DNA of 64,000 nucleotides from Macrostomum lignano (GCA_002269645.1 NIVC01001272.1:124001-188000), one strand, 5' to 3'. Counted from the first letter of the stretch, positions 8,769 through 63,391 are shown. Numbers and translations are program-made. The notes: generated by a model from the sequence alone, not told the origin.

Positions 8769-9534
<766 letters not shown>

Positions 9535-26726: not shown

Positions 26727-26808
26727 AACGGTAGTGTAGCACTGTAGCAGCTGCTAAACGTACGTGTAACTAATAAAACTGCACTTGCTTTAGGAAACAT
26801 ATATATAT

Positions 26809-29189: not shown

Positions 29190-30427
29190 ACGAGGCCAAC
29201 TCCTCCTTCGGAGAAGAAAGGGGAAGAACTCCAATCAGCGGAATTCCATTCCCTGAACTCCATCAGCGGAATCCCATTTTCCAACACCTCTCCGCGCAAC
29301 AGAAATCGTCTCCGTGAAACTGAACACTATCGAAATCCTCTCCGTGAAACTGAACACCATCGAAATATTCTCCGCGAAATAGAAATCCTCTCCGTGAAAC
29401 TGGACTAAATCGAAATTTCTCCGTCAAACAGCCCAGCTCTCAGAATTCATTGGTTAGGGTTAGGGTTAGGGTTAGAGCTACACACAGCTGCGTGTTGAAA
29501 GGCGCCGTAAAAACATTGAACCAATTAAATTGCGCAACTTATTTCTCAGGCAGTCAGTATCAGCGTCGGTTAAAGTTAACAAAAAGATTGCGCAATCTAA
29601 ATCAGCCCTCCAATACACAGCAACCGACCCCCTTCCAATACGCAGTGCAGCTAGAAATTGAACCCCCCCCTACTAACTATTGGGGGGGGTGTCGGTCGAA
29701 CCCCATTGAACTCCAAAATGAGCAAAATCTTTGCAGAAAGCTAAAAGTATGAAAATCTTTTCTTGAATGCTGTGAATTTAATTTTCATATTTAAAGCAAA
29801 AAACTTATATCCCCGAACTCATCGCAGCAAGATCTTTCCAGCAATATAAGTCTATCCTCTCTAAGTTCAAAACTCGAGCAACAGTTAGTGTTTGAAACTT
29901 TCTGATTTTAAGCATTGAAATATCGAGTGTACGTTCACTGCCTGCTAAAGATGCTCGCAAGTTTATGCATTAAAATGCACTGAATTTCACTGTGCAAAAA
30001 TTACACAGGGATTCCTGTTAAAAAACAGAACACAAATAGTTGCGCAATTGTCTATAAAGTCAGCCAGTGAGCCAGGGTCCAATTGTACACACGCCGCCAA
30101 TGAGAACGCGCCCATTCCCCCACAGGAGAGAAAATGCACTGGCGACATAGGAAAAAGTTGTGGCGTAATCACTCAAAATTCATGCAAATTTTCAGCTCCG
30201 AGCAGAAAAAGGGTACAATTAAGATTATCAAAGGTCAGAATTGCCGTTTTCTGCTTTTTTAGGGATCTTAAAATGTAAAAATAAAAGATTAAAATAGCCT
30301 AAAGCCATCCTCGGAAAATTTGCAGTTTTCCCACATAAGTTTCAACGCTGACTTGCAAGTATTCTAGGAGGAGTTATCCAACAAACACACACACACACAG
30401 ACAAACAACGCACCAGTTTTAGTATTA
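29190..30427 (-). mobile_element. DINE-1/HINE-like unit B
   Basis: AACTCCTCCTT at one end and AGGAGGAGTT near the other (subterminal IRs). It has ~30-bp internal repeats, (GGTTAG)4, the conserved block and a CA/GACA microsatellite end. Confidence 0.7.
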
Positions 30428-32935
30428 AAGTGGAACTCCTCCTTCGGAGGAGAAAGGGGAAGAACTCCCATCACCGGAATTCCATTCCCTGAAATCCATC
30501 AGCTGAAACTCCATGACTTGAATCCCATCTTCCAAATCGTCTCCAAATTCTTTACAAAACCTTTGAAAGACCATAGCTCAAAGACTCTCACGTCTCTCAT
30601 ATCTCCTCTCTCCTCTCTTCGCTATTATCGTGACTCTCTTCTCTCTCCTCTCTCTCATCTCATCTCTACCCCTACTCCCTTATTTATATCTTCTCCCTGG
30701 TCTTTCGTCTCTACTCTCTCCTGTCTCATTTCTCCCCTCTTTTCTCCTCTCTTCTCTCTCCCCTCTCCTCCCTCATCTCTCATCCTTCATCTCAGTCTTT
30801 CTTTCTTCTCTACTCTCCCCTCTCTTCTATTTCCCCTGTACGCTCTTATCCCTCATCTCTATTCTCTCTCCTATCATCTCTCCAAATTCTTTACAAAACC
30901 TTTCAAAGACCATAGCTCAAAGACTCTCACGTCTCTCATATCTCCTCTCTCATATCTCTTCCCTCATCTCACTCTTTCTTTCTCCTCTACTCTCCCCTCT
31001 CTTCTATTTCCTCTGTACGCTCTTATCCGTCATCTATTCTCTTTCCTATTATCTCTCTTGTCTCCCTCTGCTATCTCATATCTCCCCTCTCATCTCCTCT
31101 CTCCTCTTCTCTTCTCTCTCCCTCTTCGTTTCCGCCTTACTCCCCTCTTCTCTTCCATCGGTCATGTCTAATCTATCCACTCATTTCTACTCTGTTTTAT
31201 ACCATCTCATGTCTCTTCTCTTTTCGATCTTCTCTTTACTCTCTTTTATGACTGATTGAAGATGCCAAATCTATCAAGATCCTCTCCGCGAAGCAGAAAT
31301 CCTCTCCGTGAAACTGAAAACCATTGAAATCCTCTCCGCGAAACAGAAATCCTCTCCGTGAAACTGAAAACCATCGAAATTATCTCTTTAAAACTGGACT
31401 CAATCGAAATTTTCTCCGTCAAAAAGAATAAAATATTAGGATTCATTGGTTAGGGTTATTGTTAGGGTTAGGGTTAGGGTTAAAGCTACACACAGCTGCG
31501 TGTTTAAATAAAAAATTGAGCCAATTGAATCAATTGATTGCGCAACCGATTTCAAAGTCAGTCAGTATCAGTCTCGGGTAAAGTGAACAAAAAGATTGCG
31601 AAATTTAAATCAACCCTCCAGTACACAGAGACCGGCCCCTTTTCAATACGCAGTGGCAGTTAGAAATTTAACCCGGGTGTTGGGGGCATTGAACTAAAAA
31701 TGAGTACAATCTTTGCAGAAAGCTAAAAGTATGGAAATAGTTTTTGTATGCTGTGCTTTTAGTCTTTATATTTAAAGCAAACAATTTATATCCTCGAACT
31801 CAGCGTTGCAAGATCTTTTCAGCAGTATAAGTCTCTTCTCTTAAAGTTTAGAACTCGAAGAGCAGTTAGCGTTTGAAAGTTCCCGTTTTAAAGCATTGAA
31901 ATATCGAGTGTACGTTCACTGCCTGCCAAAGAGGCTCGCAAGTTTATTCATTCATTACACAGGCCGGCTATTACACAGGGCAGCCTATTAAAAGGCACAG
32001 ATAATGAAAAAAATTGATGTCGCAACCGATTTCACAGTCAGTCATTATCAGTCTCAGTTAAAGTTAACAAAAACATTGCGCAATATAAATCAACCCTCCA
32101 ATCCACAGCAGTAGTGAGAAGTTGAACCCTCCCCCCAACTTTATCTATTTCGTCTCGCAAAACTGAGTACAATATTTGCAAAAAGTTAAAGTATGGAAAT
32201 AGTTTTTCAAATGCTGTGCTTTTTCTTTTCATATTTAAAGCAAACAACTTATATCCCCGAACTCAGCGTTGCAAGATCTTTCCAGCAATATAAGTTTCTC
32301 TTTTCAAAGTTTAAAACTCGAGGAACAGTTAGCGTTTGAAACTGTCTGATTTATAGCATTGAAGTATGGAGTGTACGTTCACTGCCTGCTTGCAAGTTGA
32401 TGCATTGAATTTCAATGTCCAACAAATACACAGGGCTGCCCATTGAGAGGCAGGAAAACTTATCAGTAGCCATATATTGCGCAATTATCTATACAGTCAG
32501 CCAGTGAGCCAGGGTCCAAGTGTACACACGCAGCCACTGAGAACGCTCCCACCCCCCACTGGAAAGAAAATACACTACAGAGATAGGGAAAAGTTGTGGC
32601 GCAATCACTAAAAATTCGTGCATTTTTCAGCTCCAAGCAGAAAGAGGGGACAATTAAGATTATCAAAGGTCAAGATTCAAGTTTTCTGCTTTTTTGAGGA
32701 TCTTAGAAATTAAAATTTCAGAATTAAAATAGCCTATAGCCGACCTCGGATAATTTCCAATCTTCCCATATAAGTTTCAACGCTGAGTTGGCACTATTCA
32801 AGGAGGAGTTGTCGAAATGACAGACAGACACACAGACAGACAGACAAACAACGCGTCAACTTTAGTATATATAGATGACAGACAGACACACAGACAGACA
32901 GACAAACAACGCGTCAACTTTAGTATATATAGATA
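30428..32935 (-). mobile_element. DINE-1/HINE-like unit C
   Basis: Same ends as unit D. The conserved block is internally duplicated (about 31520-31960 and 32020-32420). The 58-bp terminal segment is duplicated (32817-32874 and 32875-32932). Confidence 0.75.
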
Positions 32936-35730
32936 GAAGTGGAACTCCTCCTTCGGAGGAGAAAGGGGAAGAACTCCCATCACCGGAATTCTATTCCCTG
33001 AAATATCCATCAACTGAAATTCCATGTCTTTAACCCTATCTTCCAAATCGTCTCCAAATTCTTTACAAAATCTTTCAAAGACCATAGCTCAAAGACTCTT
33101 ACGTCTCTCATATCTACTCTCTCCTCTCTTCGCTATTATCGTGACTCGCTTCTCTCTCCTCTCTCTCATCTCATCTCTACCCCTACTCTCTTATTTATCT
33201 CTACTCCCTTATTTATCTCTTCTCCCTCGTCTTTCGTCTGTACCCTATCCTGTCTACTCTCCTATCTTCTATCTTATCTCTCCCCTTTTCTCTCCTCTCT
33301 CATATCTAATCTCTAATCACTTATCTATCGTCTCCGCTCTACTTTCTCTCTTCTTTTTTCTCTCTTCTCTCTGCTCTCATTTCTCGTATCTCTTATACGC
33401 TCTCACCCTCTCCTTTCTTATCTCCCATCTTTCTTCCCTCCTTTCTACTGCATCACCTGTCTCCTCTCTTCTCTTTTCTCTCCTCTCCATTCTCTCTTCT
33501 CTACTCTCATCTCCCCTCATCTCTTCTCTAATCTCTAATCTCTTCTCTCTCTTATTTTCTCACTCATCTCTTTTCTCATTGCATCTCTCATCTCTCCTCT
33601 CTCTCTCTCCTCTCATCTGTACTATCTTTTTTATCTCTTCTCCCAGGTCTTTCAAATTTACTCTCTCCTGTCTCCTCTCTCCCCTCGTCTTTCCTCTCTC
33701 ATATCTCTTCTCTACTCACTTATATATTCTCTCTCCTCTGCTCCCCTTTTACACTTTCCTATATGCTCTCACTCTCACCCTCCCCTTTCTTATCTGCTGT
33801 TTTTACACTCCTTTCTACCACCTGTCTCCTCTCGTTTCTCTCCTCTCTGCACTCTCATCTTTACCCTCTTCTTTCTCCTCACTACTTTCTTCTCTTAAAT
33901 CTCTGATCTCTGATCTTTCATCTCTCTCCTCTCACCTCTCACCTCTCTCCTCTCTTTCCTCTCTTCTATTGCCTCTGTACGCTCTTGTCCCTCCTTTCTT
34001 CTCCATCCTGTCTCCTCTCTGCAATCTCATATCTCCTCTCTCATATCCTCTCCCTTCATCTCCTCTCTCCTCTTCTCTTCTCTCTCCTTCGTTCCCGCCT
34101 TACTTTCCTCTTCTCTCCCATCTGTCATGTCTAATCTCTCCACTCATTTCTACTCTGTTTTCTATCATCTCATCTCTCTTCTCTTTTCATTCTTCTCTTT
34201 ACTCTCTTCTCTGACTGATTGAAGATGCCAAATCCATCAAGATCCTCTCCGCGAAGCAGAAATCCTGTCCGTGCAACTGAAAACCATCGAAATCCTCTCC
34301 GTGAAACTGGACTCCTTCGAAATCCTCTCCTTGAAACTTAAATCCATCAAAATCGTCTCCATAAAACAGAAATCAATCATAAATTATCTCCGCGAAACAG
34401 AAATCCTCTCCGTGAAGCTGAACATCATCGAAATCCTCTCCGTGAAACTGAACACCTTCGAAATCCTCTCCGTGAAACTGAACACCTTCGAAATCCTCTC
34501 CTTGAAACTTAAATCTATCAAAATCGTCTCCATAAAGCAGAAATCAATCATAAATTTAACTCCGCGAAACAGAAATCCTCTCCGTGAAGCTGAACATCAT
34601 CAAAATCCTCTCCGTGAAACTGAGCACCATCGAAATCCTCTCCACGAAACAGAAATCCTCTTTGTCAAAATTAAAACATTGAAATCGTCTCCGCTAAACT
34701 GGACTCAATCAATTTTTTCCGTCAAACAACTCAACTCTCCGGATTCATTGGTTAGGGTTAGGGTTAGGGTTAGGGTTAGGGTTAGGGTTAGAACTACGCA
34801 CAGCTTCGTGTTAAAAGGCACTGATAAACTATTGAACTAATTGAATCAATTCATTGCGCAACCGATTTCACAGTCAGTCAGTATCAGTCTCAGTTAAAGT
34901 TAACAAAAACATTGCGCAATCTAAATCAACCCTCCAATACAAAGCAACTGACCCCCTTCCTATACACAGCGCCAGTTGGAAGTCGAAACCCCCAACTTTA
35001 TCTCTCACCTCTCGCCAAAATGAGTACAATCTTTGCAGAAAGTTTAAAGTATGGAAATAGTTTTTGCAATGCAGAGCTTTTAGTTTTCATATTTGAAGCA
35101 AACAATTTATATCCCTGAAATCAGCTTTGCAAGTTCTTTCCAGCAATATAAATTTTTTCTCTCAAAGTTAAAAACTCGAGCAACAGTTTGCGTTTGAAAC
35201 TTTCTGATTTAAAGCATTGAAATATCGATTGTACGTTCACTGCCTGCTAAAGAGGCCCGCAAGTTTATGCATTGAATTTCAACGTTCAACAAAATCACAG
35301 GGCTGCCTATTGAAAATTAGAACACAAATCTTTGCGCAATTGTCGATACAGTCAGCCAGTGAGCCAGGGTCCGATTGTACACAGGCAGCCATTTAGAACG
35401 CCCCATCCCCCCACTGGAGAGAAAATACACTGCAGAGATAGGGAAAAGTTGTGGCGCAATCACTTGAAATTCATGCAAATTTTCAGCTCCAAGCAGAAAG
35501 AGGGGACAATTAAGATTATCAAAGGTCAAGACCGCCGTTTTCTGCTTTTTTGAGGATTTTAGAAATTAAAATTTCAGAATTAAAATAGCCTATAGCCGAC
35601 CTCGGATAATTTCCAATCTTCCCATATAAGTTTCAACGCTGAGTTGCCACTATTCAAGGAGGAGTTGTCGAAATGACAGACAGACACACAGACAGACAGA
35701 CAAACAACGCGTCAACTTTAGTATATATAG
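32936..35730 (-). mobile_element. DINE-1/HINE-like unit D
   Basis: Terminal hairpin ctcctcc-ttc-ggaggag overlaps the subTIR aactcctcctt, with its inverse aaggaggagtt near the other end. It has a GTCT microsatellite on the minus strand, central tandem repeats (34240-34720), (GGTTAG)7 at 34750-34791 and a tatatatag terminus. Confidence 0.75.
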
Positions 35731-36511
35731 AGATAAGAGATATAAGAAACAATTTTTGACTGACAGAGAGGCTACCGCTCTAATAAACGACGTTCAGTCT
35801 TACAGTGAATACAGATTGACATCGCTAATCAGTCTTTTTAGTTTTGAAATTTTTTGTTAATTTTTTTTCTGATTTGTTAACAATATATGCACCTTCTCTG
35901 AAACCTAGTATGAAAATTTAAGCCACCGCTAATATCAGCCTTTTTATAAATACGAATGTAATTTGACTAGCTAATTTAACGTTACCTAACTGGAGTATAG
36001 TAAATTCTTATCCTCTTATTTTTTAAGTACATGAGAACTTACGTGTATTCAATGTAAAAAAACTAAATATCGCTGATTCTTTTGCTTCTTACTTCTTTTT
36101 ACTTCTTTTACTTCTTTCTACTTACTTCTTACTTCTTTTTACTTGCTTCTTACTTCTTACTTTTGCTTCTTTGCAAATTTTAATCTGAATTTTGACATTA
36201 TAAATATTAAGAAATGGATATAAAACGTTTTACTACGGTCGTAGCTCGTACACGGCTTGATTTGCTTTGAATTTGACAGTTAAATTATTTTTCCGTAAGA
36301 ATTCCTTAAGACGTTTAACGTTGGTTCTGCTCATTTTTTAAAACATTAGTATTACCTTGATTGCCTATCACTGTTTGATCTGCTTTGCTACGTATTAGCA
36401 GGTAAGATAAGCTTGAATGAAGATCCGCCTCCACTGTGCTAGAAGTTGGTACTTCAGCTGAATCTTTCATTGAATCTGTGAGCCCCGTTAGTCACGCTAT
36501 CGGCTCCTGAA

Positions 36512-41202: not shown

Positions 41203-42621
41203 TCTGTTACATTTTAACAACTCCAAGCATTGTTCACAGTTGCATGAACTTGTCCTTCGGTAGCGGCTTAGTAAGCGCATCTGCAACCCTATCGCCAGTT
41301 GGACAGTAGACCACCCGAATAGTCCCATTGCTGACGGCTTCACGAATGAAGTGATGTCTGATATCAATGTGCTTTGTCCGTCGGCTTCCAGCAGAATTCT
41401 CAGAAAGAGCAATGGTTCCTTGGTTGTCCTCGTAGATCACAGTGGGTCGCTCAGATCCTGATCTTTCAAGATCACTTAGTAGCCGCCGTAGCCACATGGC
41501 TTCTTGTGCTGCAGAGCTCAGCGCAACGTACTCAGCTTCCGTTGTCGAGAGTGAGACAGTTGATTGCTTCTTGCTAAGCCGGCTGATAGCGCCACCAGAT
41601 AGCTTAAACACGATGCCAGAGGTGGAATGTCGATCATCTGCGTCACTCGCCCAATCTGCATCAGAATAGCCGATCAAGTTCTCTACACTAGAGTTGTACT
41701 CTAGGCCAAAGTCGATTGTTCCCTTTAGGTATCGGAAGATTCGTTTTACTGCGGTTAGATGTATTTCTCTTGGTTTGTTGTTGAACTTGGAGACAACTCC
41801 CACTGCATACGAGATGTCTGGACGTGTAACAGTTTCTGCATAGAGCAAGCTTCCAACCATTGACTGGTAAGCTGTTGAATCAACTGGATTGCTGCCCTCG
41901 TCGTATTTGGCTAATTTTACGTTGGGATCCATCGGAGTTTTCAGGGCTACGTCGATCGTTTTCGGTTCGATAAATTCGGTCATTCTGAACGCAAAGTGTA
42001 CGGCTTCAGATGCCATTTTTGCACCTTCATATTTGAGATGGTCAGGGGCTCTCCTTTCACGTTGAGGGTATCGCTTCTGATCAGTTTCTGTCGACACTGA
42101 CTGTTCCTGTTCTTGCCTGGTGTCTCTTCTGTCATATTGGGCTCATCAAGTTTCAAGTTGAACCAGCTCGCGTCCTTGTCTCTTGTTCTATTCTTTGAGG
42201 TTCCAAAATCAGTCTCGTTGAACACCACATCGTAGCGGATGACTGTCTTTCTCAACCTTTCATCAAACAGTCTGTAGCTTCTTCCATCCGTATTGTAGCC
42301 AACGAACCGTAGCTTTTCGGCCTTCTTGTCTAGCTTCTTTCGCTTCACATCTGGTATGTGGGCATAGGCTACGCAGCCGAAAACACGAAAGTGCCCAACG
42401 TCGGGCTTGCGCCCATACCAACGCTGGTACGGCGTCATTTGCGGAGTAACAGCAGTCGTCACGACTCTATTTCGCACATAAGCTGCGGTGTTTACTGCTT
42501 CTGCCCAGAACTGGTTGCTTACTCCAGCATGGGCCATCATTGTGGGGGCTGATTCAACGAGAGTGCGATTCATCCGTTCGGCAACGCCATTTTGCTGAGG
42601 TGTATGAGCCACGGTAGTCAT
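41203..42621 (-). pseudogene. pol: copia pol remnant: C-terminal integrase core, RT C-terminus and RNase H
   Basis: Motifs: HTPQQNGVAERMNRTLVE, WAEAVNTAAY, RVFGCVAY, EPKT..|TPMD, YQSMVGSLLY, GYSDADWA, STTEAEYVA, YEDNQG, KHIDIRHHFIRE, ADALTKPL. Most of RT is missing, and there is a frameshift near 42110. Confidence 0.93.
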
Positions 42622-42661
42622 TTGACAACACGATGTCGCAGACCTTGACCTTTTTGGGTCT

Positions 42662-43291
42662 TCAGTGCAGACTCTTCACCCTGTGTTCCTGTGTACCACC
42701 AGACCCTCGCTCACCTAATTCACTCCGCTTTTGCTCCTCGTTGATGAGTGCTTGGTGAACCATCTGCAGTGTAAGATCATCACCGCGAGCTTCCAAGGCA
42801 GTAACCAAGGTAGAGTAGCTCTCAGGCAGGCTGCTGAGCAGCATGACCACTTGGTCCTCTTCACTGACGGGTGCGTTGATAGAGGCCAGTTTGTCGGTCA
42901 GCTCCTTCATATGGCGTATATGATCCTGTACGCGGGTCCCTTCACTCATCTGCAGCCGGAAAAGCTGCTTCTTCAAATAGATCTTATTCGCAGTTGATTC
43001 TTGTTCGAAGTGCTGTTGGAGAGCTTGCCACATGCGATGTGGATCTTCGCCACACGAAGTTATTAGATAGATTAACTCTTTCTTGATTGAAAGAACGATC
43101 ACTGCAGCAGCTCTCTGTTGCTGCTCTCGAAATTCGTTTTCTTGCTCCTGAGTGGCATCCTCTGCGAGAATTACGGAACCGTCGACGACTCCCCAGAGCT
43201 TCCTCGCTATAAGACAGAACTTGATCTGGATCTTCCAGGTAGTGCAGATTCCGCTTCCCAGCTTGTCGACTTGAAACTTATCATCCGCCAT
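42662..43291 (-). pseudogene. gag: copia gag (UBN2-type), truncated before the zinc knuckle
   Basis: WKIQIKFCLIARKLWGVVDG, MWQALQQHFE, LKKQLFRLQMSEG, LLSSLPESYSTLV. Confidence 0.9.
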
Positions 43292-43608: not shown

Positions 43609-43626
43609 CATCCCATATCCCATCCT

Positions 43627-44320
43627 AGATCCCAGATCCTAGATCCCAGATCCTAGATCCCAGATCCTAGATCCCAGATCCTAGATCCCAGATCCTAGAT
43701 CCCAGATCCTAGATCCCAGATCCTAGATCCCAGATCCTAGATCCCAGATCCTAGATCCCAGATCCTAGATCCCAGATCCTAGATCCCAGATCCTAGATCC
43801 CAGATCCTAGATCCCAGATCCTAGATCCCAGATCCTAGATCCCAGATCCTAGATCCCAGATCCTAGATCCCAGATCCTAGATCCCAGATCCTAGATCCCA
43901 GATCCTAGATCCCAGATCCTAGATCCCAGATCCTAGATCCCAGATCCTAGATCCCAGATCCTAGATCCCAGATCCTAGATCCCAGATCCTAGATCCCAGA
44001 TCCTAGATCCCAGATCCTAGATCCCAGATCCTAGATCCCAGATCCTAGATCCCAGATCCTAGATCCCAGATCCTAGATCCCAGATCCTAGATCCCAGATC
44101 CTAGATCCCAGATCCTAGATCCCAGATCCTAGATCCCAGATCCTAGATCCCAGATCCTAGATCCCAGATCCTAGATCCCAGATCCTAGATCCCAGATCCT
44201 AGATCCCAGATCCTAGATCCCAGATCCTAGATCCCAGATCCTAGATCCCAGATCCTAGATCCCAGATCCTAGATCCCAGATCCTAGATCCCAGATCCTAG
44301 ATCCCAGATCCTAGATCCCA
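43627..44320. repeat. 14-bp tandem array (AGATCCC-AGATCCT), about 50 copies
   Basis: No variant units were seen in the body of the array; only the edges are degenerate. Confidence 0.98.
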
Positions 44321-44392
44321 GAACTAGATCATGTTTAACCATATGTCTTTGCAGTTTCTGCCGTCAGTGAGCAAAATCGTCATTTTCTAAAG

Positions 44393-47300
44393 ATGGCTGA
44401 AACGGCTGGAGCACATGTAAAGCAAATTGCGGATGTTGAAAAATGCTGGCTTGAAAGTTCACCTACTTTTTGGGACGCAGAAGAGGTCGATAATAATCAA
44501 AACAAAGGTCTGCTCTTCTACGCAAAAAGTTACGACTTTCAGGTGGTAATTGATATCATTAAAGACTTCGAAAAGCTAGAATTACTAGAAGATGACAATC
44601 GTCGGACGGCAGCTCACTTTGCAGCCATGCATCAGAATGGAGAAGACGCGCTGACAGCTTTAGTTCAGAAGTTCGGAGCAACCTGTCTGCAAAGTCGTGA
44701 CTTAGACAATATAACCCCGCTGCACTTGTCTGCTCGCTATCACTCGCCGCCGTCCTGGAGGTCAAATTTCAAACTTATCAAGTCTGTTAACCTCTCAAAC
44801 TACAAAGATTCAAACGGAGACACGTGCGCTCACTGGGCTGCTCAAAACGCGAATGACTACAAAATGGTGCTCACCGTGAAGGACCATGCTTTTGGAGTTT
44901 GCTGGAATTGGAAGAATAACAGAGAAGAAACTGTATTACACCATGTACTTCAGTATTTCCGAAGCGAGGAAGCTCTCAAGGAGATCCTCGATAGCATAGG
45001 GAAGACTAGCGATGTCTTTACAGAAAAAGACGTCGACAACTATACCGTAGTGCACTTTGCTGCCAAAAATAATAATTTCGATGCCATTAGCATCTTAAAA
45101 CCGTGGTATAGTATAAGTTTATCTTCTACTAGCAAAGAAGCATCAAATAATGACAAAAAGGAGACAGTTCTACATTTGGCCCTGAAACACTACAGCGAAG
45201 AAACAGCAATGAAACTCATTGATGACGCTGCTTCTAAAGTGTCGTTAACGAAGCTGCTAGAGCAGAAGGACAGTCAGGGAAACACCTATCTGCATGCGAT
45301 GGCTCAGTGCCAAGGCAAAGATGCAGCGCTACTGAAGGCTGCATTGCAGCATGCTCGAGAGCAAGAAACTATGGAACCAGCCCATAAAAAAAGGCCTGTA
45401 CCTCAGAAAAAATTGTCCTATTTAAGTAAATCTGGAGTTCAACAGTACAAAAACATCTCGGTAGAAGGTGACCGCCAGCATTGCCTTCTTGATCAAAACA
45501 AGCGCAAATCTACGGTTCTTCATTACGCTATGGAAAATTGTAGACTCGAAACTGTAAAAAAACTGCTCGGCGAGCTAAAGTCTGTCGATAGCCTACTAAT
45601 CCGCGACAAAGACGGAAACACAGCTATCCACATCGCAGCAAAGAGAAAAGACAAGTATGAGGTGCTTAATGAAATTATCAAACACTATAGCTTAACGCAG
45701 CAGAATGGAGCTCATTCGATTTTAAGCAAGCGAAACAACAAAAATCAATCAGTGCTTCACCTGGCAATCGATGCGATGGGTCCATCTGAGCCCGATCAAC
45801 AGCACGAAACTATAGAGTCTTTGATTAAAAAAATGCCACAGGATGAGCTCATCCGAACCGATAGAGCAGGAAATACACTACTGCATTCACTGATGCAGAG
45901 TAGACTCACTTATGATGGAGTTGAACAGCAAATATTTAATCGATTCATGTGGCTTGCTAATGAAGCCAATGTAAATCCTGAAGCTGTAAACAACCTCAGT
46001 CTGAACTGCCTGCATGCAACAAAACTTGATGCTTCAATTCTGTGCAAGCTGCTTCGTAAAGTTAAAGACAAAAAAGCAAAAAAGATCTTCGATAAACTAC
46101 TCGTAAATTCAGCGACTGGTGCCCACGTTATTCACACGTTTTCCGGGCAGTACAGCCTTCAGCAGTCAGTATCTACACAGGGCGAGCAGTCGACAACTAT
46201 GCTACATATAATCGCAAAATTATCAAAAGTAACTGGAGATCCTGAGTCTCAAGTCTTAAAACTGATCAAGAAGAAAGTAAATCCGCCATCTTGCGGGAAC
46301 AATGAACACGGAGAGACATGCTTGCATTTTGCCTGCGCTTATGGCCATCGCGAAAACATTGTGTTTTTGCTTTCGAAAGGCTTAAGCCTTTGGTCAACGT
46401 CTCATTCGGGGCAAACTTGCGTGGACTTCGCCTTTGAAAACGGAAAATTTGATGACCTTGCGCAGGCTGCTAGAGAATATAACAAAAAAATTCAGGAGGG
46501 GGCTTTAATTAAAACTGAAAGTCCGCAACATGACAGAACCGATCCACTAACGGTTAGTCGTGATTTATATGATTCTCGCAAAGCAATCAAAACAATTGAC
46601 ATGTGCCGTCTTCTAGATCCGCCTCATAGGGCGCTAAAGCTTCCTGACAGGCAAGACGCTAGAAAGACTCTGGCGCCCATCATGAACGAATATAGAGCCA
46701 CAAAGCAAAGCCACGGCTTAAACACAAAGAAACATATGAGGGATAAAATTGTGCTGATCAGAGCGCTAGAAATGGACTCCACAAAAATATTTCGCTCTGC
46801 ACTTAGCCTGGACATGGTGACGCGTGAAACAGGGGAGTCTTTCACTAGCTATTTCCTTGATGCACTCAAAAACGAGAAAGATCTCCTTCGAAACGGTTTC
46901 CCTCGACAGAACGTATTCAAGCAAATGACTCACGTCGATGCTGCTTTTGAATTGGAAATTTTAGACTTGGCCGCCTTCTTCTACCGTGACGAGATTATGC
47001 CGGATCTGATTTTGACTCGACAATTTGAGCTGATTCCGTGCTGCCTCAGCTTGCTCATCCATCTGGGTCCGAAAATTGTTGAATTGCAAGCTAAGTCAGA
47101 AGACAAGCATGAGCAATTGCTTCAACTGCAGAGGAAAGTAACTAACATTGCAATGAACGCATTAAATGAGTTATTTATTAACGCTGAGGGCGCTGAGAGG
47201 GAGCTGCTGTTTAAATACATTAAAGGAGAGTTAACACCCTTAACTCTGACCAACGAAGAAAAATCGATGAAAAAGTACAGCGACTTTTTGGGGCCTAAGT

Positions 47301-49178
47301 TTCCATACCGAGTCTCTGATGGAAGTGAGAGAATAAATTACGGCAGCGTACTTGACCTTGTGAAGGAAGCCGATTGCTCGGATCTTTTTGCAACCGACTG
47401 CATCTATTATCTGACGAAAGTAGAGTGGAGAGAACCCATCTCATCTTGCTCAAAGGAACATGGATGTTGTGGAAACTGTCTTTTATGCAGCGCCTCCAAA
47501 AGATTTTTCACCAGCCAGTCAAAATTTTCGAAACTAAACTCTCCAAAAGCAAAATTCTTGAGCCAAATATTCACCTTTATTTTGTTTCTTGCTTTCTTTG
47601 GCTGGTACGTTATAAATTTTCAGAAAACTTTCTGGATGGGTCCTGTGGATGCAGTTCTTGTGGCGTACTTTTTTTCGTTCCTCCTGCAAGAGTTGCGGGA
47701 AATAAAACGATTAAAAGGAAAGAAAGCTTTAGTAATCTTAGGTAAGCGCGTAAAGTGGGTTAACCCATACGTCAGAGACTGGCAGAATATGCTCGATATC
47801 GCTGCCCTTTCGTTGCTACTCTTCGGACTGGGCACAAGGTACTTTTATTACTCTAAAGGTTTTAAGTCGGAAGACGCCTATCCAAGTCAGATGATTCTTG
47901 GAACATCATACGCACTTTTCTGTTTTCGATCTGTATCGTTTCTTGGGAAATTTTATAGCGTCGGACCCATGATAAGCATGCTTGGGAATTTAATATTTTT
48001 TGACTTGCTACCATTTCTGCTGATACTGATGGTAATATTCTGCTCTTTTGGAGTCTTTTTTACCTGCTTGCTGTTTTCTTTTACTTGGGCTCCTAAAGCT
48101 GACGTTGACAATCCGTACTATGGATGGGAAGTGTTTGTTCAAACTGCCACCCTGCCGTTTAACTTGCTGTTTAACAACTTCGACCAGATCGAGTTCAGTT
48201 CTTCTCCAGACAGCACAAAGTTAGGAAAAGTCGCTATCAAACCAGGCCATGAGTGGTTTTATCAACTGCTAATATTCATTTTCCTGGGCCTGGTGAATGT
48301 GGTGATGATGAACCTGCTGATCGCGCTCTTCAATTTGCGAGTCACCCAAATGTACGGCGTGGCCATCGGCATCTGGAGAAAAAAGTACTTTCAGGTGCTA
48401 CAGGAGTACAAGAAAATGACAACGCTTCCTCCTCCCTTTTCTTTTCTGGAGCACACTTTAAGCTTAATTTGCTTCATAAACAAGAAAATTTGCAAATACT
48501 GTTGCAAAAACGACGTGAGCAGCTTAGCGACATGTGACTTTGAAACTCACCCTGACTATAAACAATTTGAGGTAAGTTTTGCATCGCTCCATTTGCTACG
48601 TTTTTTACGTCAGGTTTCATTGAGTTTTAAATTTTTTCTACCCCTTAATACGCTTTCAGGATGATTATGCAAAGTGGTGGATGGACGAAAAGCGCTACCC
48701 CGCAGATTACCTGCGATTTCTCCAGTTCCAAGCAATTCAGTTCCGCAGATGCCGACATCGACTGCTTCGCGACTCCCAGTGGAACAAAAACGACTTTGAC
48801 CTGGTGACGGCACGCACGGCAAACGAGCTTTCCGATTTAAAATCGGAGCTGCAGGAAATGCTGGAAAATTTTAAGCGAAAAGAAGAGGACAGGCAGCACA
48901 GACACGATTCGCCGAATGACAGTAAGCAGAAAAGTAGAGAAATGGATCATTCGGAACGAACTGCAACGCCGGAGTACGATCTCACCCAAGAAACGCAGGA
49001 GAACCGCCAAATTCAAACATTGCTGGAGGAGCTAAATGAACGAAGAAATGAAAGTGTTGAAAAATTGACAAAACTCGAAGAGCGAATGACGCGACAAAGG
49101 CGTCGAATAAAAGACATGGAGTCGAAACTTGACAAGCTTTTAGAGCTTGCTGAGCAGCAGCATCACGCATCCACATGA
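44393..49178 (+). CDS. Ankyrin-repeat TRP cation channel with a TRPM-like MHR3/4-TM-TRP helix-coiled coil core, paralogue 3, intact (1,565 aa)
   Basis: Exon 44393-48571, phase-0 intron 48572-48659 (gtaagt..ttcag), exon 48660-49178. About 14-16 TxxH-type ankyrin motifs, pre-S1 SPKAKF, six hydrophobic segments, NLLIALF...IW...EY...LPPPF and a C-terminal coiled coil (LEERMTRQRRRIKDMESKLDKLLEL). Confidence 0.92.
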
Positions 49179-58600: not shown

Positions 58601-60690
58601 AACAAATAGACAGCAAAATAAAGCCTTCATAAAAAACAACAGACATTCCCTCTAAAAACAAAAACTCCCAAGACAGCAAGCATCCCCCAGACAGCATTCA
58701 AGCATCGATCCCCAGATAGCAAGCATCCCCCAGATAGCAAGCATCCCCCAGATAGCAAGCATCCCCTAGACAGCAAGCATCCCCCAGACCGCAAGCAACC
58801 CCAGATAGCAAGCATAACCTGGATACAAAGAGACCTTATAGATATCTAGCTTGATTGATTATTTTTTTGTATCAGATAAAGAGAAAAAATAGCTATTTAC
58901 ATTATGGCAGTTAGTATCTAGAAAAGGTACACACATTTTATAAGAGACATGGTTAGTGGAATTTCCCAGCTATTTAAATTCTAACAATACTATTTATATT
59001 TGCTTATTCAGCCTTTATTTTGGCACTTCTTTCACTTATCTCCATCTCAGGTGTTGGCAAGAGCTCCCTACTAGTTCGCTACACAGATGACACTTTTTCT
59101 GGCAGTTACATCACCACTATTGGCGTTGACTTCAAGATTAAAACTATTGAAGTAAATGGCGTCAGAGTGAAGCTGCAGATTTGGGACACTGCTGGTAAGG
59201 TATACATTTTGAAAACTGTACATCTAATTTATAAATTGATTTCAAAATCTGTCATAGAGGGTTTGAAAATCGGTCATGAACTGATTGTAAAATCGGTCAT
59301 AAACTTATTTAAAAATTGGTCATAGACTAATTTAAAAATCAGTCATCAACTGATTTAAAAATTGGTCATAGAGTGTTTAAAAATCGGTCATAGACTAATT
59401 TAAAAATCAGTCATCAACTGGTTTAAAAATTGGTCATAGAGTGTTTAAAAATCAGTCATAGACTAATTTCAAAATCGGTCATCAACTGATTTAAAAATCG
59501 GTCATAGAGTGTTTAAAATCGGTCACAGAGTGATTTGAAAATCGGTCCTAAACTGATTTCAAAATCGGTCTTAAAATGATTGGAAAATCGGTCATAGACT
59601 AATTTCAACATCGGTCATAAACTGATTTCAACATCGGTCATAAACTGATTTCAATATCGGTCATAGAGTGTTTGAAAATCGGCCATGAACTGATTTGAAA
59701 ATCGGTCATAAACTGATTGTAAAATCGGTCATAAACTTATTTAAATATCGGTCATAGACTAATTTAGAAATCGGTCATCAACTTATTTAAAAATCGGTCA
59801 CAGTGATTTGAAAATCGGCCATAGACTAATTTCAAAATCGGTCATCAACTGATTTAAAAATCGGTCACAGTGATTTCAAAATCGGTCATAGACTAATTTC
59901 AAAATCGTATCATCAACTGATTTGAAAATCGGTCATAAACTGCATTACTAAGCCTGACGCTTCTTGTATGTAAACATTATCGCAGGTCAGGAAAGATTCC
60001 GCACAATCACAGCAACGTATTACCGCGGCGCTCACGGAATTATTGTTGTGTACGACGTGAACTCTGCTGGCACTTTTTTAAACGTAAAACGCTGGTTTGA
60101 AGAGATTCAACAGCACTGTCCAACTGCTGTTGCTAAGGTTATTGGTGAGTAGTACTTAGGCTTTTTATTTTCTAAATTTGAGTTTTAATCTGAAATCGAT
60201 TCTAAAATAAAATTATATACGCTACATATCGGCAGTTGTCGGATATCAGATATTTAATAAAGTTACCTACGCTACATATCGGTAGTTTTGCACACTACAA
60301 ACCGTCAACCATTTAAAACTGTACCCCCAGTTGGCAACAAAAACGACTGCCCAGAGACTAAAGTGATCTCAACGCCAGACTTGAAAACCGTGGCCGACGA
60401 ATTCAATGTGCCATTTGTGGAAACCTCCGCCAAAGACAACGTCAATGTTGATTTGGTAAGAGTTATTTATACAAAATTTATTAATAATTGCCAACTTGTA
60501 CATGTATTGCTGCATTAATTTTCAGCTATTCAATTTAATTACTGAGGAGATTCTGAAAACCAAGCGATCGGGCGGTCAGAGCGGAGGCAACGGCGCCGAC
60601 AAAGGCGGAGGAGGCAGCAGCGGCGGCGCCATCAAAGTGACCAAAGTCAAGAGCGGCACCGGCAGCGGTGGAAAAAAGAAATGCTGCTAA
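55695..60690 (+). CDS. RAB35: Rab35-like small GTPase (215 aa)
   Basis: Exons 55695-55749, 59051-59194, 59986-60144, 60331-60455 and 60526-60690. All introns are GT-AG and the CDS totals 648 nt. Motifs: [74 protein letters not shown] and a KKKCC prenylation tail. Confidence 0.9.
55880..57820. mobile_element. Foldback-type element in Rab intron 1: long inverted arms with 12-bp internal tandem repeats
   Basis: 55887-56105 is the inverse of 57606-57814. The (tttcccgca...) array at 56113-56285 is the inverse of the (...tgcgggaaa) array at 56975-57193. Extra duplicated modules lie at 57205-57600. Confidence 0.75.
58668..58815. repeat. ~18-19-bp minisatellite (cagatagcaagcatcccc), about 7 copies, intronic
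   Basis: Direct reading. Confidence 0.9.
59230..59941. repeat. ~21-22-bp minisatellite (aaaatcggtcat...actgattt), about 30 copies, filling Rab intron 2
   Basis: Direct reading. Confidence 0.93.
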
Positions 60691-60875: not shown

Positions 60876-62090
60876 TACCGAAAGGGGCGGAAGCTACAGA
60901 AGGGGCGGAAGCTACAGAAGGGGTGGAAGCTACAGAAGGGGCGGAAGCTACAGAAGGGGCGGAAGCTACAGAAGCGGAAGCTACAGAAGGGGTGGAAGCT
61001 ACAGAAGGGGTGGAAGCTACCGAAGGGGTGGAAGCTACAGAAGGGGTGGAAGCTACAGAGAGGGGTGGAAGCTACAGAAGGGGTGGAAGCTACAGAGAGG
61101 GGGCGGAAGCTACAGAAGGGGCGGAAGCTACAGAAGGGGTGGAAGCTACAGAAGGGGTGGAAGCTACAGAAGGGGTGGAAGCTACAGAGAGGGGGTGGAA
61201 GCTGCAGAAGGGGTGGAAGCTACAGAAGGGGTGGAAGCTACAGAGAAGGGGCGGAAGCTACAGAAGGGGTGGAAGCTACAGAAGCGGAAGCTACAGAAGG
61301 GGTGGAAGCTACAGAAGGGGTGGAAGCTACAGAGAGGGGGTGGAAGCTACAGAAGGGGCGGAAGCTACAGAAGGGGCGGAAGCTACAGAAGGGGTGGAAG
61401 CTATAGAAGGGGTGGAAGCTAAAAAAGGGGGGAAGCTACAGAGGGGGTGGAAGCTACAGAAGGGGCGGAAGCTACAGAAGGGGTGGAAGCTACAGAAGGG
61501 GTAGAAGCTACAGAAGGGGCGGAAGCTACAGAAGGGGCGGAAGCTACAGAAGCGGAAGCTACAGAAGGGGTGGAAGCTACAGAAGGGGTGGAAGCTACAG
61601 AGAGGGGGTGGAAGCTACAGAAGGGGTGGAAGCTACAGAAGGGGTAGAAGCTACAGAAGGGGTGGAAGCTATAGAAGGGGTGGAAGCTAAAAAAAGGGGG
61701 GAAGCTACAGAGGGGGTGGAAGCTACAGAAGGGGCGGAAGCTACAGAAGGGGTGGAAGCTACAGAAGGGGCGGAAGCTACAGAAGGGGCGGAAGCTACAG
61801 AAGGGGCGGAAGCTACAGAAGCGGAAGCTACAGAAGGGGTGGAAGCTACAGAAGGGGTGGAAGCTACAGAAGGGGCGGAAGCTACAGAATAGCCGGAAGC
61901 TACAGAAGGGGTGGAAGCTACAGAATAGGCGGAACCTACAGAATAGGCGGAAGCTACAGAAGGGGCGGAAGCTACAGAATAGCCGGAAGCTACAGAAGGG
62001 GTGGAAGCTACAGAATAGGCGGAAGCTACAGAAGGGGCGGAAGCTACAGAGAAGGGGCGGAAGCTACAGAAGGGGCGGAAGCTACAGAAG
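60876..62090. repeat. 18-bp G-rich minisatellite (GGAAGCTACAGAAGGGG[T/C]), about 65 copies
   Basis: Direct reading, with 12-, 19- and 20-bp variant units. Confidence 0.97.
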
Positions 62091-62734: not shown

Positions 62735-63245
62735 CCCCTCTCCCCCTGTCACTCCCTTATCTGCACTGTCACTCCCTTATCTGCACTGTCACTCCACTTA
62801 TCTGCCCTGTCACTCCCTTATCTGCACTGTCACTCCACTTATCTGCCCTGTCACTCCCTTATCTGCACTGTCACTCCACTTATCTGCCCTGTCACTCCCT
62901 TATCTGCACTGTCACTCCACTTATCTGCCCTGTCACTCCCTTATCTGCACTGTCACTCCACTTATCTGCCCTGTCACTCCCTTATCTGCACTGTCACTCC
63001 ACTTATCTGCCCTGTCACTCCCTTATCTGCACTGTCACTCCACTTATCTGCCCTGTCACTCCCTTATCTGCACTGTCACTCCACTTATCTGCCCTGTCAC
63101 TCCCTTATCTGCACTGTCACTCCACTTATCTGCCCTGTCACTCCCTTATCTGCACTGTCACTCCACTTATCTGCCCTGTCACTCCCTTATCTGCAATGTC
63201 ACTCCACTTATCTGCCCGTCACTCCCCTTATCAGCACTGTCACTC
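62735..63245. repeat. 41-bp minisatellite (20+21-bp dimer), about 12 copies
   Basis: cactcccttatctgcactgt alternates with cactccacttatctgccctgt. Confidence 0.95.
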
Positions 63246-63391
63246 CGCTCCCCTTTCACTGCCCTCTTCATCTACAATGTCGGACCTTTTTTCACCCAGC
63301 ATTTTCGCTCCTGCCCCCATAAATATTCATTTTTAAAACTTGTCAATTTGTTCAAATTTCTGCTGACAAGGCCGCATTAGCGTAGCCAATC

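What the first reader, a model, noticed from the sequence alone, without database searches (positions are those of the whole stretch)
44393..49178. Ankyrin-TRPM chimera: a long TRPA-like ankyrin array on a TRPM-type channel body
Seen: about 14-16 ankyrin motifs (residues ~70-680), then a helical linker, S1-S6, TRP helix and coiled coil. Established: TRPM channels lack ankyrin repeats and start with MHR1/2 (SLOG). TRPA has about 14-17 repeats with a short linker and no LPPPF box, TRPC has about 4 and TRPN about 29. Inference from motif alignment by eye: ALEMDSTKIF, DLAAFFYRDEI..., KVTNIAMNALNELF, DLFATDC.....EW, SPKAKF and NLLIALF....IW....EY...LPPPF line up with TRPM MHR3, MHR4, pre-S1, S1, S6 and the TRP domain. 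The ankyrin array would then replace MHR1/2, an architecture outside the usual TRP subfamily definitions. This may be a lineage-specific sensory channel family.
Basis: partly seen in the sequence, partly recalled or inferred. Interest (0 to 1): 0.85.

Follow-up and report, generated by a model that had tools for sequence, protein, structure and literature searches.

The report
Flatworm ankyrin-TRPM-like cation channel gene
This is an intact gene of the flatworm Macrostomum lignano for a TRP cation channel that has a long ankyrin-repeat arm where melastatin-type (TRPM) channels normally have their N-terminal domain; that build is real but was already described in parasitic flatworms (the meclonazepam target TRPM_MCLZ), and this gene belongs to a large, undescribed sister expansion with a much longer ankyrin arm.

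Summary
Window 44393-49178 (+) is a two-exon gene with an 88-nt GT..AG intron at 48572-48659. It encodes 1565 aa, differing at 8 residues from Macrostomum lignano BOX15_Mlig002051g1.

The protein has about 16 ankyrin repeats (res 36-701), a helical linker, S1-S6, a TRP helix with LPPPF, and C-terminal heptads.

The channel body is TRPM-type. PDB sequence hits reach E 1e-16 for TRPM3/2/7/4/5, and all top 50 Foldseek hits are TRPM. TRPN/TRPC outgroups score about half as much, and TRPA1 matches only the ankyrin part. The distal linker (res ~852-1015) matches TRPM MHR4/pre-S1, but only through an intermediate. MHR3 equivalence is not supported.

The novelty claim fails in part. An ankyrin N-terminus on a TRPM body lacking MHR1/2-SLOG is published for flatworm TRPM_MCLZ, whose clade is called "TRPM-like". 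This gene belongs to a sister family (100% bootstrap for the family, about 65-70% for the sister link). Its ankyrin array is about three times longer, it is greatly expanded in M. lignano, and three tandem copies lie in this window.

Function is inferred: a tetrameric cation channel, probably Ca2+-modulated, with unknown stimulus. I rate it a new variant of a known kind, moderate interest.

The parts
44393..48571 (+). Exon 1 (codons 1-1393): ankyrin array, linker, S1-S6, TRP helix
   Evidence: Uninterrupted ORF. GT donor at 48572. Matches P0001 residues 1-1393.
48572..48659 (+). Intron, 88 nt, GT..AG
   Evidence: Sequence read. The junction ...KQFE|DDYAKWW reproduces P0001. The same intron is in the other assembly copy, L001, and at the same position in tandem paralog B.
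48660..49178 (+). Exon 2 (codons 1394-1565 plus stop): family-conserved C-terminal region and heptad segment
   Evidence: The C-terminal part is conserved across paralogs, with phmmer E down to 1e-43.
44498..46495 (+). Ankyrin-repeat solenoid, about 16 repeats (res 36-701), with a disordered insert at res 329-359
   Evidence: Pfam ankyrin families. AF2 model with pLDDT 79.3 and 16 helix pairs. Foldseek matches to ankyrin-1, AnkB, NOMPC and TRPA1 arrays.
46496..46945 (+). Proximal linker (res 702-851) with the family-conserved motif RLLDPPxRALKLPDR (res 739-753). It has no detectable relative outside the family.
   Evidence: Conserved in family alignments. No PDB hit. No profile match to MHR3.
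46946..47437 (+). MHR4-like helical domain plus pre-S1 (res 852-1015)
   Evidence: hhalign of the family linker against the TRPM_MCLZ-like linker gives probability 96%, E 4.6e-9. That linker against canonical TRPM MHR3/4 gives 99.3%, E 2e-20. The direct comparison is not significant (E 0.028) but is colinear. phmmer cross-hits are.
47543..47944 (+). S1-S4 voltage-sensor-like domain (res 1051-1184). E1100, E1103, N1132 and D1135 sit at the TRPM Ca2+-site positions, and R1179 lies in S4.
   Evidence: Helices in the AF2 model. Alignment to TRPMs. Residue numbering.
47963..48352 (+). S4-S5 linker, S5, pore helix, filter region (LLFNNFDQIEF, with the TRPM filter Gly replaced by Asn) and S6 (VNVVMMNLLIALF)
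48353..48439 (+). TRP helix (IWRKKYFQVLQEY) and LPPPF box (res 1321-1349)
   Evidence: Aligned to the TRPM3/TRPM2 TRP domain. Family consensus W-R-x-x-R/Y...EY...LPPP.
49005..49160 (+). Heptad-repeat segment (res ~1509-1560), a putative coiled coil
   Evidence: In 28-residue windows, at least 75% of a/d positions are L/I/V/M. Pfam TRPM_tetra was not hit.

Best explanation
The region is an intact two-exon gene of the free-living flatworm Macrostomum lignano. It encodes a 1565-aa subunit of a TRP cation channel from the flatworm 'TRPM-like' lineage, whose characterised member is TRPM_MCLZ.

Shown:
- In place of the SLOG/MHR1-2 domain of canonical TRPMs, the N-terminus is an ankyrin solenoid of about 16 repeats.
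- The distal linker is remotely homologous to TRPM MHR4/pre-S1.
- S1-S6, the TRP helix and the LPPPF box are TRPM-type.
- The gene is one of three tandem paralogs in the window and part of a large M. lignano expansion.

Inferred:
- Four subunits assemble into a cation channel, helped by the C-terminal coiled coil.
- The MHR4-like domain and TRP helix couple the cytoplasmic arm to the S6 gate, as in TRPMs.
- The conserved acidic/amide quartet in S2-S3 (E1100, E1103, N1132, D1135) binds Ca2+ and makes gating Ca2+-dependent, as in TRPM2/4/5/8.
- The long ankyrin arm supplies a docking, tethering or spring surface that sets what each paralog responds to.

The physiological stimulus and the ion selectivity are unknown. 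The canonical filter glycine is Asn here.
For: Gene model and organism:
- Searches give the model and species. The same gene with the same intron sits in an independent assembly copy at 99% DNA identity, with 10 synonymous and 8 nonsynonymous codon differences.

Domain content:
- The ankyrin array is shown.
- No LSDAT/SLOG hit or any other TRPM N-terminal Pfam hit was found.

TRPM-type channel body:
- PDB phmmer places res 1046-1367 on TRPM3/2/7/4/5 at E 1e-16 to 1e-12. The NOMPC TM segment gets only 18 bits, and TRPA1 matches only the ankyrin part.
- The top 50 Foldseek PDB hits of the linker+TM model are all TRPM, at E 4e-11 to 1e-9 over about 800 aligned columns.
- The family HMM scores TRPM_MCLZ-like proteins at a median of 153 bits, canonical TRPM at 120, and TRPN/TRPC at 61. 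The outgroups were verified as NOMPC-like and TRPC4/5-like.

Linker and tree:
- Linker homology runs family -> MCLZ-like at 96% and MCLZ-like -> TRPM MHR3/4 at 99.3%. PF25508 is found above its cutoff in the MCLZ-like proteins P0050 and P0064.
- In the NJ tree the family gets 200/200 bootstraps, and family plus MCLZ-like gets 65-70%.

Residues and literature:
- The Ca2+-site positions, S4 Arg, GP in the S4-S5 linker, NLLIA in S6 and W in the TRP helix are conserved.
- TRPM_MCLZ forms a functional channel with this architecture in HEK293 cells (PMC10788528).
Against: - No experimental or transcript data for this gene were seen.
- The AF2 model of the linker+TM part has low confidence (pLDDT 59.8, pTM 0.45). 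The fold match therefore has TM-scores of only about 0.4.
- The direct profile match of the family linker to canonical TRPM is not significant, at E 0.028. No family member hits PF25508 even at E<=10.
- The sister relation to TRPM_MCLZ-like proteins has only 65-70% NJ bootstrap support. It could be inflated by long-branch attraction between fast-evolving flatworm sequences.
- TRPA, TRPV and TRPS were not included in the tree.
- The selectivity-filter glycine is replaced (LLFNNF), so conduction properties cannot be inferred.
- Pfam TRPM_tetra was not hit.
Confidence: 0.8

Rival explanations
1. It belongs to an independent, ancient TRP family that is sister to TRPM (and TRPS) and kept the ancestral ankyrin N-terminus. 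On this reading it is not a flatworm-specific derivative of a TRPM in which ankyrin repeats replaced SLOG.
For: In the NJ tree the ankyrin-bearing clade sits outside the canonical TRPMs, and the branching order is unresolved: canonical TRPM monophyly has only 9/200 support. Himmel et al. did not sample Platyhelminthes when they inferred an ankyrin-free TRPM-TRPS ancestor (PMC7306681). PMC12861061 places the TRPM_MCLZ clade 'next to' the TRPMs.
Against: Every ankyrin-bearing member whose source I could name comes from a flatworm: M. lignano, Opisthorchis or Schistocephalus. The exceptions are a few unnamed representatives and one unattributed 5-kb environmental contig. An exhaustive HMMER scan of 1.8 billion representatives showed no ankyrin-TRPM among the non-flatworm hits in the best 150. 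MCLZ-like proteins still carry a recognisable TRPM MHR3/4 domain, which fits descent from a TRPM.
Confidence: 0.1
2. It is a young duplicate that no longer makes a working channel: a decaying or non-conducting copy in a tandem array.
For: The TRPM filter glycine is replaced by Asn. Neighbouring tandem copies show defects in this window: an in-frame stop in copy A and two frame changes in copy B. The gene lies among retrotransposon fragments and satellite arrays.
Against: The gene has 1565 codons with no stop or frameshift and an intact GT..AG intron, and is identical in structure in a second assembly copy. Gating and structural residues are conserved. The filter Gly-to-Thr/Asn change is shared by several intact paralogs (P0017, P0168, P0176), so it is a subfamily trait and not decay. 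The ratio of 8 nonsynonymous to 10 synonymous codon changes suggests constraint, although the counts are small.
Confidence: 0.08
3. It is really a TRPA-, TRPN- or TRPC-type channel whose TM region only looks TRPM-like. Alternatively, it is an assembly or annotation chimera that joins an ankyrin gene to a channel gene.
For: The repeat count (about 16) is in the TRPA1 range. The ankyrin part aligns to NOMPC and TRPA1. From my own knowledge, LPPPF-type boxes also occur in TRPC.
Against: The TM region matches only TRPMs strongly. TRPN and TRPC outgroups score half as much and never group with the family. The ankyrin array and channel lie in one uninterrupted exon. That arrangement recurs in two assemblies, in three tandem copies and in dozens of paralogs.
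Confidence: 0.02

Closest known systems
TRPM_MCLZ (Schistosoma mansoni Smp_333650) and its orthologs, the flatworm 'TRPM-like' clade
   Same: - Ankyrin repeats at the N-terminus in place of MHR1/2-SLOG.
- A TRPM-type S1-S6 and TRP helix.
- An MHR4-like linker (hhalign 96%).
- Intron-poor genes: 3 exons there, 2 here.
- Sister groups in the TM tree at 65-70% bootstrap.
- TRPM_MCLZ is a proven cation channel (PMC10788528; PMC11731825; PMC12861061).
   Different: - About 16 repeats over 670 residues here, against Pfam-detected ankyrin repeats spanning about 200 residues in P0051, P0178 and P0050.
- A shorter linker (about 340 aa against 460) that Pfam PF25508 no longer recognises.
- Only about 20-23% identity in the TM region.
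- The S2 'EExRQ' motif becomes QELRE, and the filter differs.
- A distinct conserved C-terminal region is present.
- The family is massively expanded in M. lignano, which also keeps MCLZ-like genes such as P0050.
- Meclonazepam sensitivity is unknown.
Canonical TRPM channels (TRPM2/3/4/5/7/8)
   Same: They are the best sequence and fold matches for S1-S6 and the TRP domain. The S2/S3 Ca2+-site positions, S4 Arg, NLLIA S6 motif, W..RY..EY TRP helix, LPPP box and MHR4/pre-S1 remnant are shared.
   Different: There is no SLOG/MHR1-2, no detectable MHR3, and no Nudix or kinase domain. Ankyrin repeats are present, whereas TRPM and TRPS are described as ankyrin-free (PMC7306681). TRPM_tetra was not detected.
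NOMPC/TRPN and TRPA1
   Same: Both have a long N-terminal ankyrin solenoid on a six-TM TRP channel. The array superposes on the NOMPC and fly TRPA1 arrays.
   Different: The TM region is not of their type: NOMPC TM gets 18 bits, TRPA1 TM gets no hit, and the TRPN/TRPC HMM gives about 65 bits against about 140 for TRPM. The resemblance is one of architecture (convergence or domain shuffling) and does not indicate common descent of the channel body.

Membership tests
TRPM (canonical melastatin) | N-terminal MHR1/2 = SLOG (Pfam LSDAT_euk) | tested here: not met
   Pfam scan at E<=0.1 returns only ankyrin families for res 1-1423. Res 36-701 fold as an ankyrin solenoid.
TRPM (canonical melastatin) | MHR3/MHR4 helical region before S1 (Pfam PF25508 covers the distal part) | tested here: inconclusive
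   MHR4/pre-S1 homology is seen only transitively, at 96% and then 99.3% hhalign probability. The direct comparison gives E 0.028. No PF25508 hit appears in 7 family sequences at E<=10. No signal was found for MHR3.
TRPM (canonical melastatin) | S1-S6 and TRP domain closest to TRPM; TRP helix W-K/R-x-x-R-Y..EY followed by LPPP | tested here: met
   PDB phmmer gives E 1e-16 to TRPM3/2. All top 50 Foldseek hits are TRPM. HMM cross-scores are and motif blocks.
TRPM (canonical melastatin) | No ankyrin repeats (as stated in PMC7306681) | tested here: not met
   About 16 repeats are present.
TRPM (canonical melastatin) | C-terminal tetramerising coiled coil (Pfam TRPM_tetra) | tested here: inconclusive
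   Heptads occur at res 1509-1560, but there is no PF16519 hit.
Flatworm TRPM-like clade (TRPM_MCLZ type) | N-terminal ankyrin repeats instead of SLOG on a TRPM-type body | tested here: met
   The definition comes from PMC11731825 section 3.1 and the PMC12861061 Fig. 1 legend.
Flatworm TRPM-like clade (TRPM_MCLZ type) | Groups with TRPM_MCLZ orthologs in a TM-region tree | tested here: met
   The NJ tree puts the family together with P0043, P0051, P0178 and related sequences in 65-70% of 200 bootstraps. The reciprocal HMM score is highest for this group. Support is moderate and the method is distance-based only. The Opisthorchis members show the duplicated exon 3 reported for TRPM_MCLZ (PMC12861061 section 3.4).
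Flatworm TRPM-like clade (TRPM_MCLZ type) | Activation by meclonazepam through the S1-S4 pocket (His at the key S4 position) | not tested
TRPA | TRPA1-type TM domain behind a 14-17-repeat ankyrin array | tested here: not met
   The repeat count fits, but TRPA1 chains match only res 59-276, the ankyrin part, and never the TM region. No TRPA appears in the top 50 fold hits. TRPA was not included in the tree.
TRPN (NOMPC) | About 29 ankyrin repeats, NOMPC-type TM domain, EWKFGRA TRP box | tested here: not met
   There are 16 repeats. The NOMPC TM stretch scores 18 bits. The TRPN/TRPC HMM gives about 65 bits against about 140 for TRPM. The TRP box is IWRKKY.
TRPC | About 4 ankyrin repeats, TRPC-type TM domain, EWKFAR TRP box | tested here: not met
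   A verified TRPC (P0215) sits in the outgroup. No TRP_2 Pfam hit was found, and the TRP box differs.
TRPS (soromelastatin) | SLOG and Nudix domains, no ankyrin repeats, sister clade to TRPM | tested here: not met
   Domain content does not fit. The phylogenetic relation to TRPS could not be tested because no identified TRPS reference sequence was at hand.

The most novel reading that the evidence does not exclude
The ankyrin-bearing flatworm channels (TRPM_MCLZ-like plus this long-array family) could form a separate, old TRP family that branched off before canonical TRPMs diversified. It would have kept, or very early regained, an ankyrin N-terminus. Within it, Macrostomum would have evolved a radiation of long-spring channels that act as tethered mechano- or multimodal sensors: a NOMPC-like design built on a TRPM chassis. 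This would revise the 'ankyrin-free TRPM-TRPS ancestor' picture.
Probability: 0.1. Interest if true: 0.7.

Novelty: new variant of a known kind. Interest (0 to 1): 0.4.

Why it matters
TRPM_MCLZ and TRPM_PZQ are the targets of anthelmintic drugs, so the evolution of flatworm TRPM-type channels has practical interest. This locus shows three things about the ankyrin-for-SLOG swap:
- It is not confined to parasites.
- It exists in a free-living model flatworm in two forms, short-array MCLZ-like genes and a long-array family.
- The long-array form has radiated into at least about 18 lineages that are less than 50% identical to each other, some of them in tandem clusters.

That gives a genetically tractable system (RNAi and transgenesis in M. 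lignano) for asking what an ankyrin arm does on a TRPM body. It also adds a phylum that was missing from the analyses which concluded that TRPM/TRPS ancestors lacked ankyrin repeats.

Tried and rejected
1. The linker alone against PDB sequences found nothing.
2. The direct profile-profile comparison of the family linker with canonical TRPM MHR3/4 was not significant, at E 0.028. WIN 521-860 against MHR3 found nothing. I therefore dropped the MHR3 claim.
3. A Pfam PF25508 scan of family members at E<=10 gave no hit.
4. The word-indexed homolog search reached little beyond M. lignano in all three tries. As a result the MSAs for structure prediction stayed shallow (17 and 12 sequences) and the linker+TM model is poor.
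5. I looked for a ready-made flatworm TRP reference FASTA, Supplementary Dataset 1 of PMC12861061. It is not held. The tree therefore lacks named TRPA, TRPV and TRPS references and Smp_333650 itself.
6. No maximum-likelihood software was available. I used neighbour joining on Kimura-corrected distances with 200 bootstraps.
7. I considered an assembly or annotation chimera and rejected it. The single exon, the second assembly copy and the many paralogs argue against it.
8. I considered specific TRPA affinity of the array and rejected it. The best fold matches are ankyrin-1 and AnkB.
9. I checked whether the 'P0048-type' hits are TRPS. They have no SLOG hit, so they were left unclassified.


Full report
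**What is at the coordinates**

The 1423-codon ORF at 44393-48664 and the 165-codon ORF at 48681-49178 are two exons of one gene. The sequence reads ...CAATTTGAG|GTAAGT...TTTCAG|GATGATTAT..., which gives an 88-nt GT..AG intron at 48572-48659. Splicing yields a 1565-aa protein. It differs at 8 residues from P0001, 'hypothetical protein BOX15_Mlig002051g1' of Macrostomum lignano.

The public contig carrying P0001 is NIVC01000114.1 (locus L001). It is about 99% identical in DNA to window 36.9-55.6 kb. The window is therefore the same locus in another haplotype or assembly. Across the gene there are 18 nucleotide differences, giving 10 synonymous and 8 nonsynonymous codon changes and none in the intron. 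The host is a free-living flatworm (Platyhelminthes, Macrostomorpha).

**Anatomy**

- *Ankyrin array.* Pfam finds only ankyrin families in exon 1, with Ank_2 at E 1.4e-29 in 6 stretches. An AlphaFold2 model of res 1-720 is good (pLDDT 79.3, pTM 0.71). It shows 16 helix-pair units from res 36 to 701, interrupted by a disordered insert at 329-359.
- *Array type.* The best PDB fold matches are long solenoids of any origin: ankyrin-1, AnkB, NOMPC, latrotoxin and fly TRPA1. The array is long, but it is not specifically TRPA-like.
- *Linker and TM region.* The model of res 620-1393 is weak (pLDDT 59.8, pTM 0.45, built from only 17 sequences). It still shows an all-helical linker, six TM helices, a pore helix and a long S6-TRP helix.
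- *C-terminus.* Exon 2 carries a family-conserved segment (WW.D..YP.EY..FL.FQA.QFRR...) and heptads at about res 1509-1560.

**Which TRP family the channel body belongs to**

- *Sequence matches.* phmmer against all PDB chains aligns res 1046-1367 with TRPM3, TRPM2, TRPM7, TRPM4 and TRPM5 at E 1e-16 to 1e-12. The NOMPC TM segment gets 18 bits, and TRPA1 chains match only the ankyrin part.
- *Fold matches.* Foldseek with the linker+TM model returns TRPM chains for all top 50 places (E 4e-11 to 1e-9, about 800 aligned columns). TM-scores are only about 0.4 because the model is poor.
- *Exhaustive scan.* A HMMER scan of 1.84 billion representatives with res 698-1423 gave two tiers. About 45 clusters share linker, TM and C-terminus; this is the 'family'. 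Below E of about 1e-20, hits match the TM region only.
- *The second tier.* It consists of canonical TRPMs (lamprey TRPM5, lungfish and abalone TRPM2-like) and a second kind of flatworm protein with a short ankyrin block, an MHR-like linker and a TRPM-type TM region. Examples are P0051/P0189 (Schistocephalus), P0178 and P0043/P0177 (Opisthorchis), and P0050 (M. lignano).
- *HMM cross-scores.* A family HMM scores those short-ankyrin proteins best (median 153 bits). Canonical TRPMs follow at 120, and a TRPN/TRPC outgroup scores 61. The outgroup was verified as NOMPC-like (P0209, 312 bits) and TRPC4/5-like (P0215, 219 bits).
- *Tree.* A neighbour-joining tree of 318 TM columns gives the family 200/200 bootstraps. 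The family plus two further M. lignano genes gets 199/200. That group plus the short-ankyrin flatworm group gets 65-70%. The position of this combined clade relative to canonical TRPMs is not resolved.

**The linker**

Alone, the linker hits nothing in the PDB or in Pfam. Profile-profile comparison gives a chain of matches.

- The family linker (WIN about 852-1015) against the short-ankyrin group's linker: probability 96%, E 4.6e-9.
- That linker against canonical TRPM MHR3/4: 99.3%, E 2e-20.
- The direct comparison is not significant (E 0.028). It does pair KVTNIAMNALNELF and SVLDLVKEADCSDLFATDCIYYLTKVEW with the TRPM MHR4 and pre-S1 motifs, in the right order.

Pfam PF25508 ('TRPM2-like domain') lies just before S1 in TRPMs. 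It is found above its cutoff in the short-ankyrin proteins P0050 and P0064. MHR4/pre-S1 ancestry of res 852-1015 is therefore supported, though only through an intermediate. Res 702-851, which includes ALEMDSTKIF and the family motif RLLDPPxRALKLPDR, has no detectable relative, and no MHR3 signal was found.

**Functional residues**

The alignment blocks show the following in this protein.

| Element | Sequence or residues | Comparison |
|---|---|---|
| S2 | QELRE (E1100, E1103) | TRPMs have EExRQ |
| S3 | NxxD (N1132, D1135) | Same pattern as TRPMs |
| S4 | R1179 | Conserved Arg |
| S4-S5 linker | GP | Invariant |
| S6 | VNVVMMNLLIALF | NLLIA motif kept |
| TRP helix | IWRKKYFQVLQEY, then LPPPF | TRPM-type |
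| Filter | FNNF | TRPM F-G-(E/Q) glycine replaced by Asn; related intact paralogs have Thr |

From established knowledge of TRPM2/4/5/8 structures, the S2 and S3 positions are the Ca2+-coordinating ones. They correspond to E768, Q771, N794 and D797 of zebrafish TRPM5; mutants at Q771 and D797 appear among the PDB titles. Keeping four oxygen ligands at these positions makes a Ca2+ site plausible. Because of the filter change, selectivity cannot be predicted.

**What is already known**

The architecture is not new.

[quoted passage not shown] It was previously called TRPM7-like and gives meclonazepam-evoked cation currents in HEK293 cells (PMC10788528).
- A review states that it 'lacks the NH2-terminal MHR1/2 or SLOG domain' and has ankyrin-like modules instead (PMC11731825, section 3.1).
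- A 2026 paper places it in a clade next to the TRPMs and calls the group 'TRPM-like' because of the N-terminal ankyrin repeats (PMC12861061).

The short-ankyrin flatworm proteins found here are that group. They come from parasitic flatworms, one carries the name 'TRPM7', and their TM region lies at about 850-1150, as the residues H946 and Y1038 of Sm.TRPM_MCLZ imply. The Opisthorchis models contain two TM copies, which matches the duplicated exon 3 reported for Opisthorchis TRPM_MCLZ (PMC12861061, section 3.4).

I found no description of the long-array family or of its expansion in M. lignano. The large TRPM/TRPS surveys did not sample flatworms, or do not mention ankyrin-bearing TRPMs (PMC7306681; PMC13143021).

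**What is new here**

This is a sister subfamily to TRPM_MCLZ-like channels.

- Its ankyrin array is about three times longer. Some paralogs of 1700-2100 aa have longer arrays still.
- Its linker is shorter and more diverged.
- It has its own conserved C-terminus.

Every named member is from M. lignano, with at least about 18 full-length lineages below 50% identity. The exceptions are one protein on a 5.1-kb environmental contig binned as a bacterial MAG, plus a few unnamed representatives. M. lignano also keeps MCLZ-like genes such as P0050.

The window itself holds three tandem copies on the + strand.

| Copy | Window coordinates | Notes |
|---|---|---|
| A | 10467 to about 15240 | Has an in-frame stop near 11739 |
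| B | 22019-26723 | Is P0002 at 97-99.6% identity, with two frame changes at 22705 and 23418 |
| C | 44393-49178 | The gene of the finding |

**Mechanism (inferred)**

I infer a tetrameric cation channel in which the MHR4-like domain and TRP helix couple the cytoplasmic arm to the gate. A retained S2-S3 cation site would make gating Ca2+-dependent. The ankyrin arm would serve as a docking or tether surface whose diversification across paralogs tunes the stimulus. None of this was tested.

**Verdict**

The 'outside known definitions' claim is superseded by the TRPM_MCLZ literature. I rate this a new variant of a known kind, of moderate interest.

Noticed in passing
window 10467-15240 and 22019-26723 (+): Two further tandem paralogs of the same ankyrin-TRPM-like family lie upstream. 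Copy A is 47-59% identical and partly matches gene model P0007; it has an in-frame stop near 11739. Copy B is P0002 at 97-99.6% identity but needs frame changes at 22705 and 23418, and has its intron at the same position as the gene of the finding. The defects could be real (decaying copies) or indel errors of this assembly.
   Followed up: partly
window 43622-44330: A 14-nt tandem array (ATCCTAGATCCCAG, about 50 copies, 99% matches) ends 63 nt before the start codon of the gene. Its length differs in the other assembly copy (L001).
   Followed up: no
window 41234-43291 (-) and 3441-4007 (+): LTR-retrotransposon fragments are present: copia-type gag (Retrotran_gag_2, E 3e-45), a retroviral polymerase SH3-like domain, and an integrase zinc-binding domain. 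Compared with the window, L001 has an extra 1.1 kb at the junction near window position 42619.
   Followed up: partly
window 8769-9534, 16665-17294, 59231-59942, 60882-62090, 62746-63246: Several large satellite or microsatellite arrays are present: (ATAG)x191, a 15-mer x42, a 23/68-mer, an 18-mer x67 and a 41-mer x12. Some create long spurious ORFs on both strands.
   Followed up: no
window 26000-36000: This block has strongly negative GC skew (-0.24 to -0.45), unlike the rest of the window. It contains a 171-nt/30-nt repeat at 34259-34655 and a 396-aa ORF (33024-34214) with no Pfam hit.
   Followed up: no
P0032/P0175 (not in the window): The only full-length family member not attributed to M. 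lignano sits on a 5,106-bp contig deposited as 'MAG: Kangiellaceae bacterium'. A 1537-aa ankyrin-TRP channel there is almost certainly eukaryotic contamination of a bacterial bin.
   Followed up: no
P0043/P0177 (Opisthorchis viverrini, not in the window): These gene models of 1906-2059 aa contain two copies of the TM region. This is probably the alternative exons 3a and 3b of TRPM_MCLZ joined end to end by the annotator (compare PMC12861061, section 3.4).
   Followed up: partly
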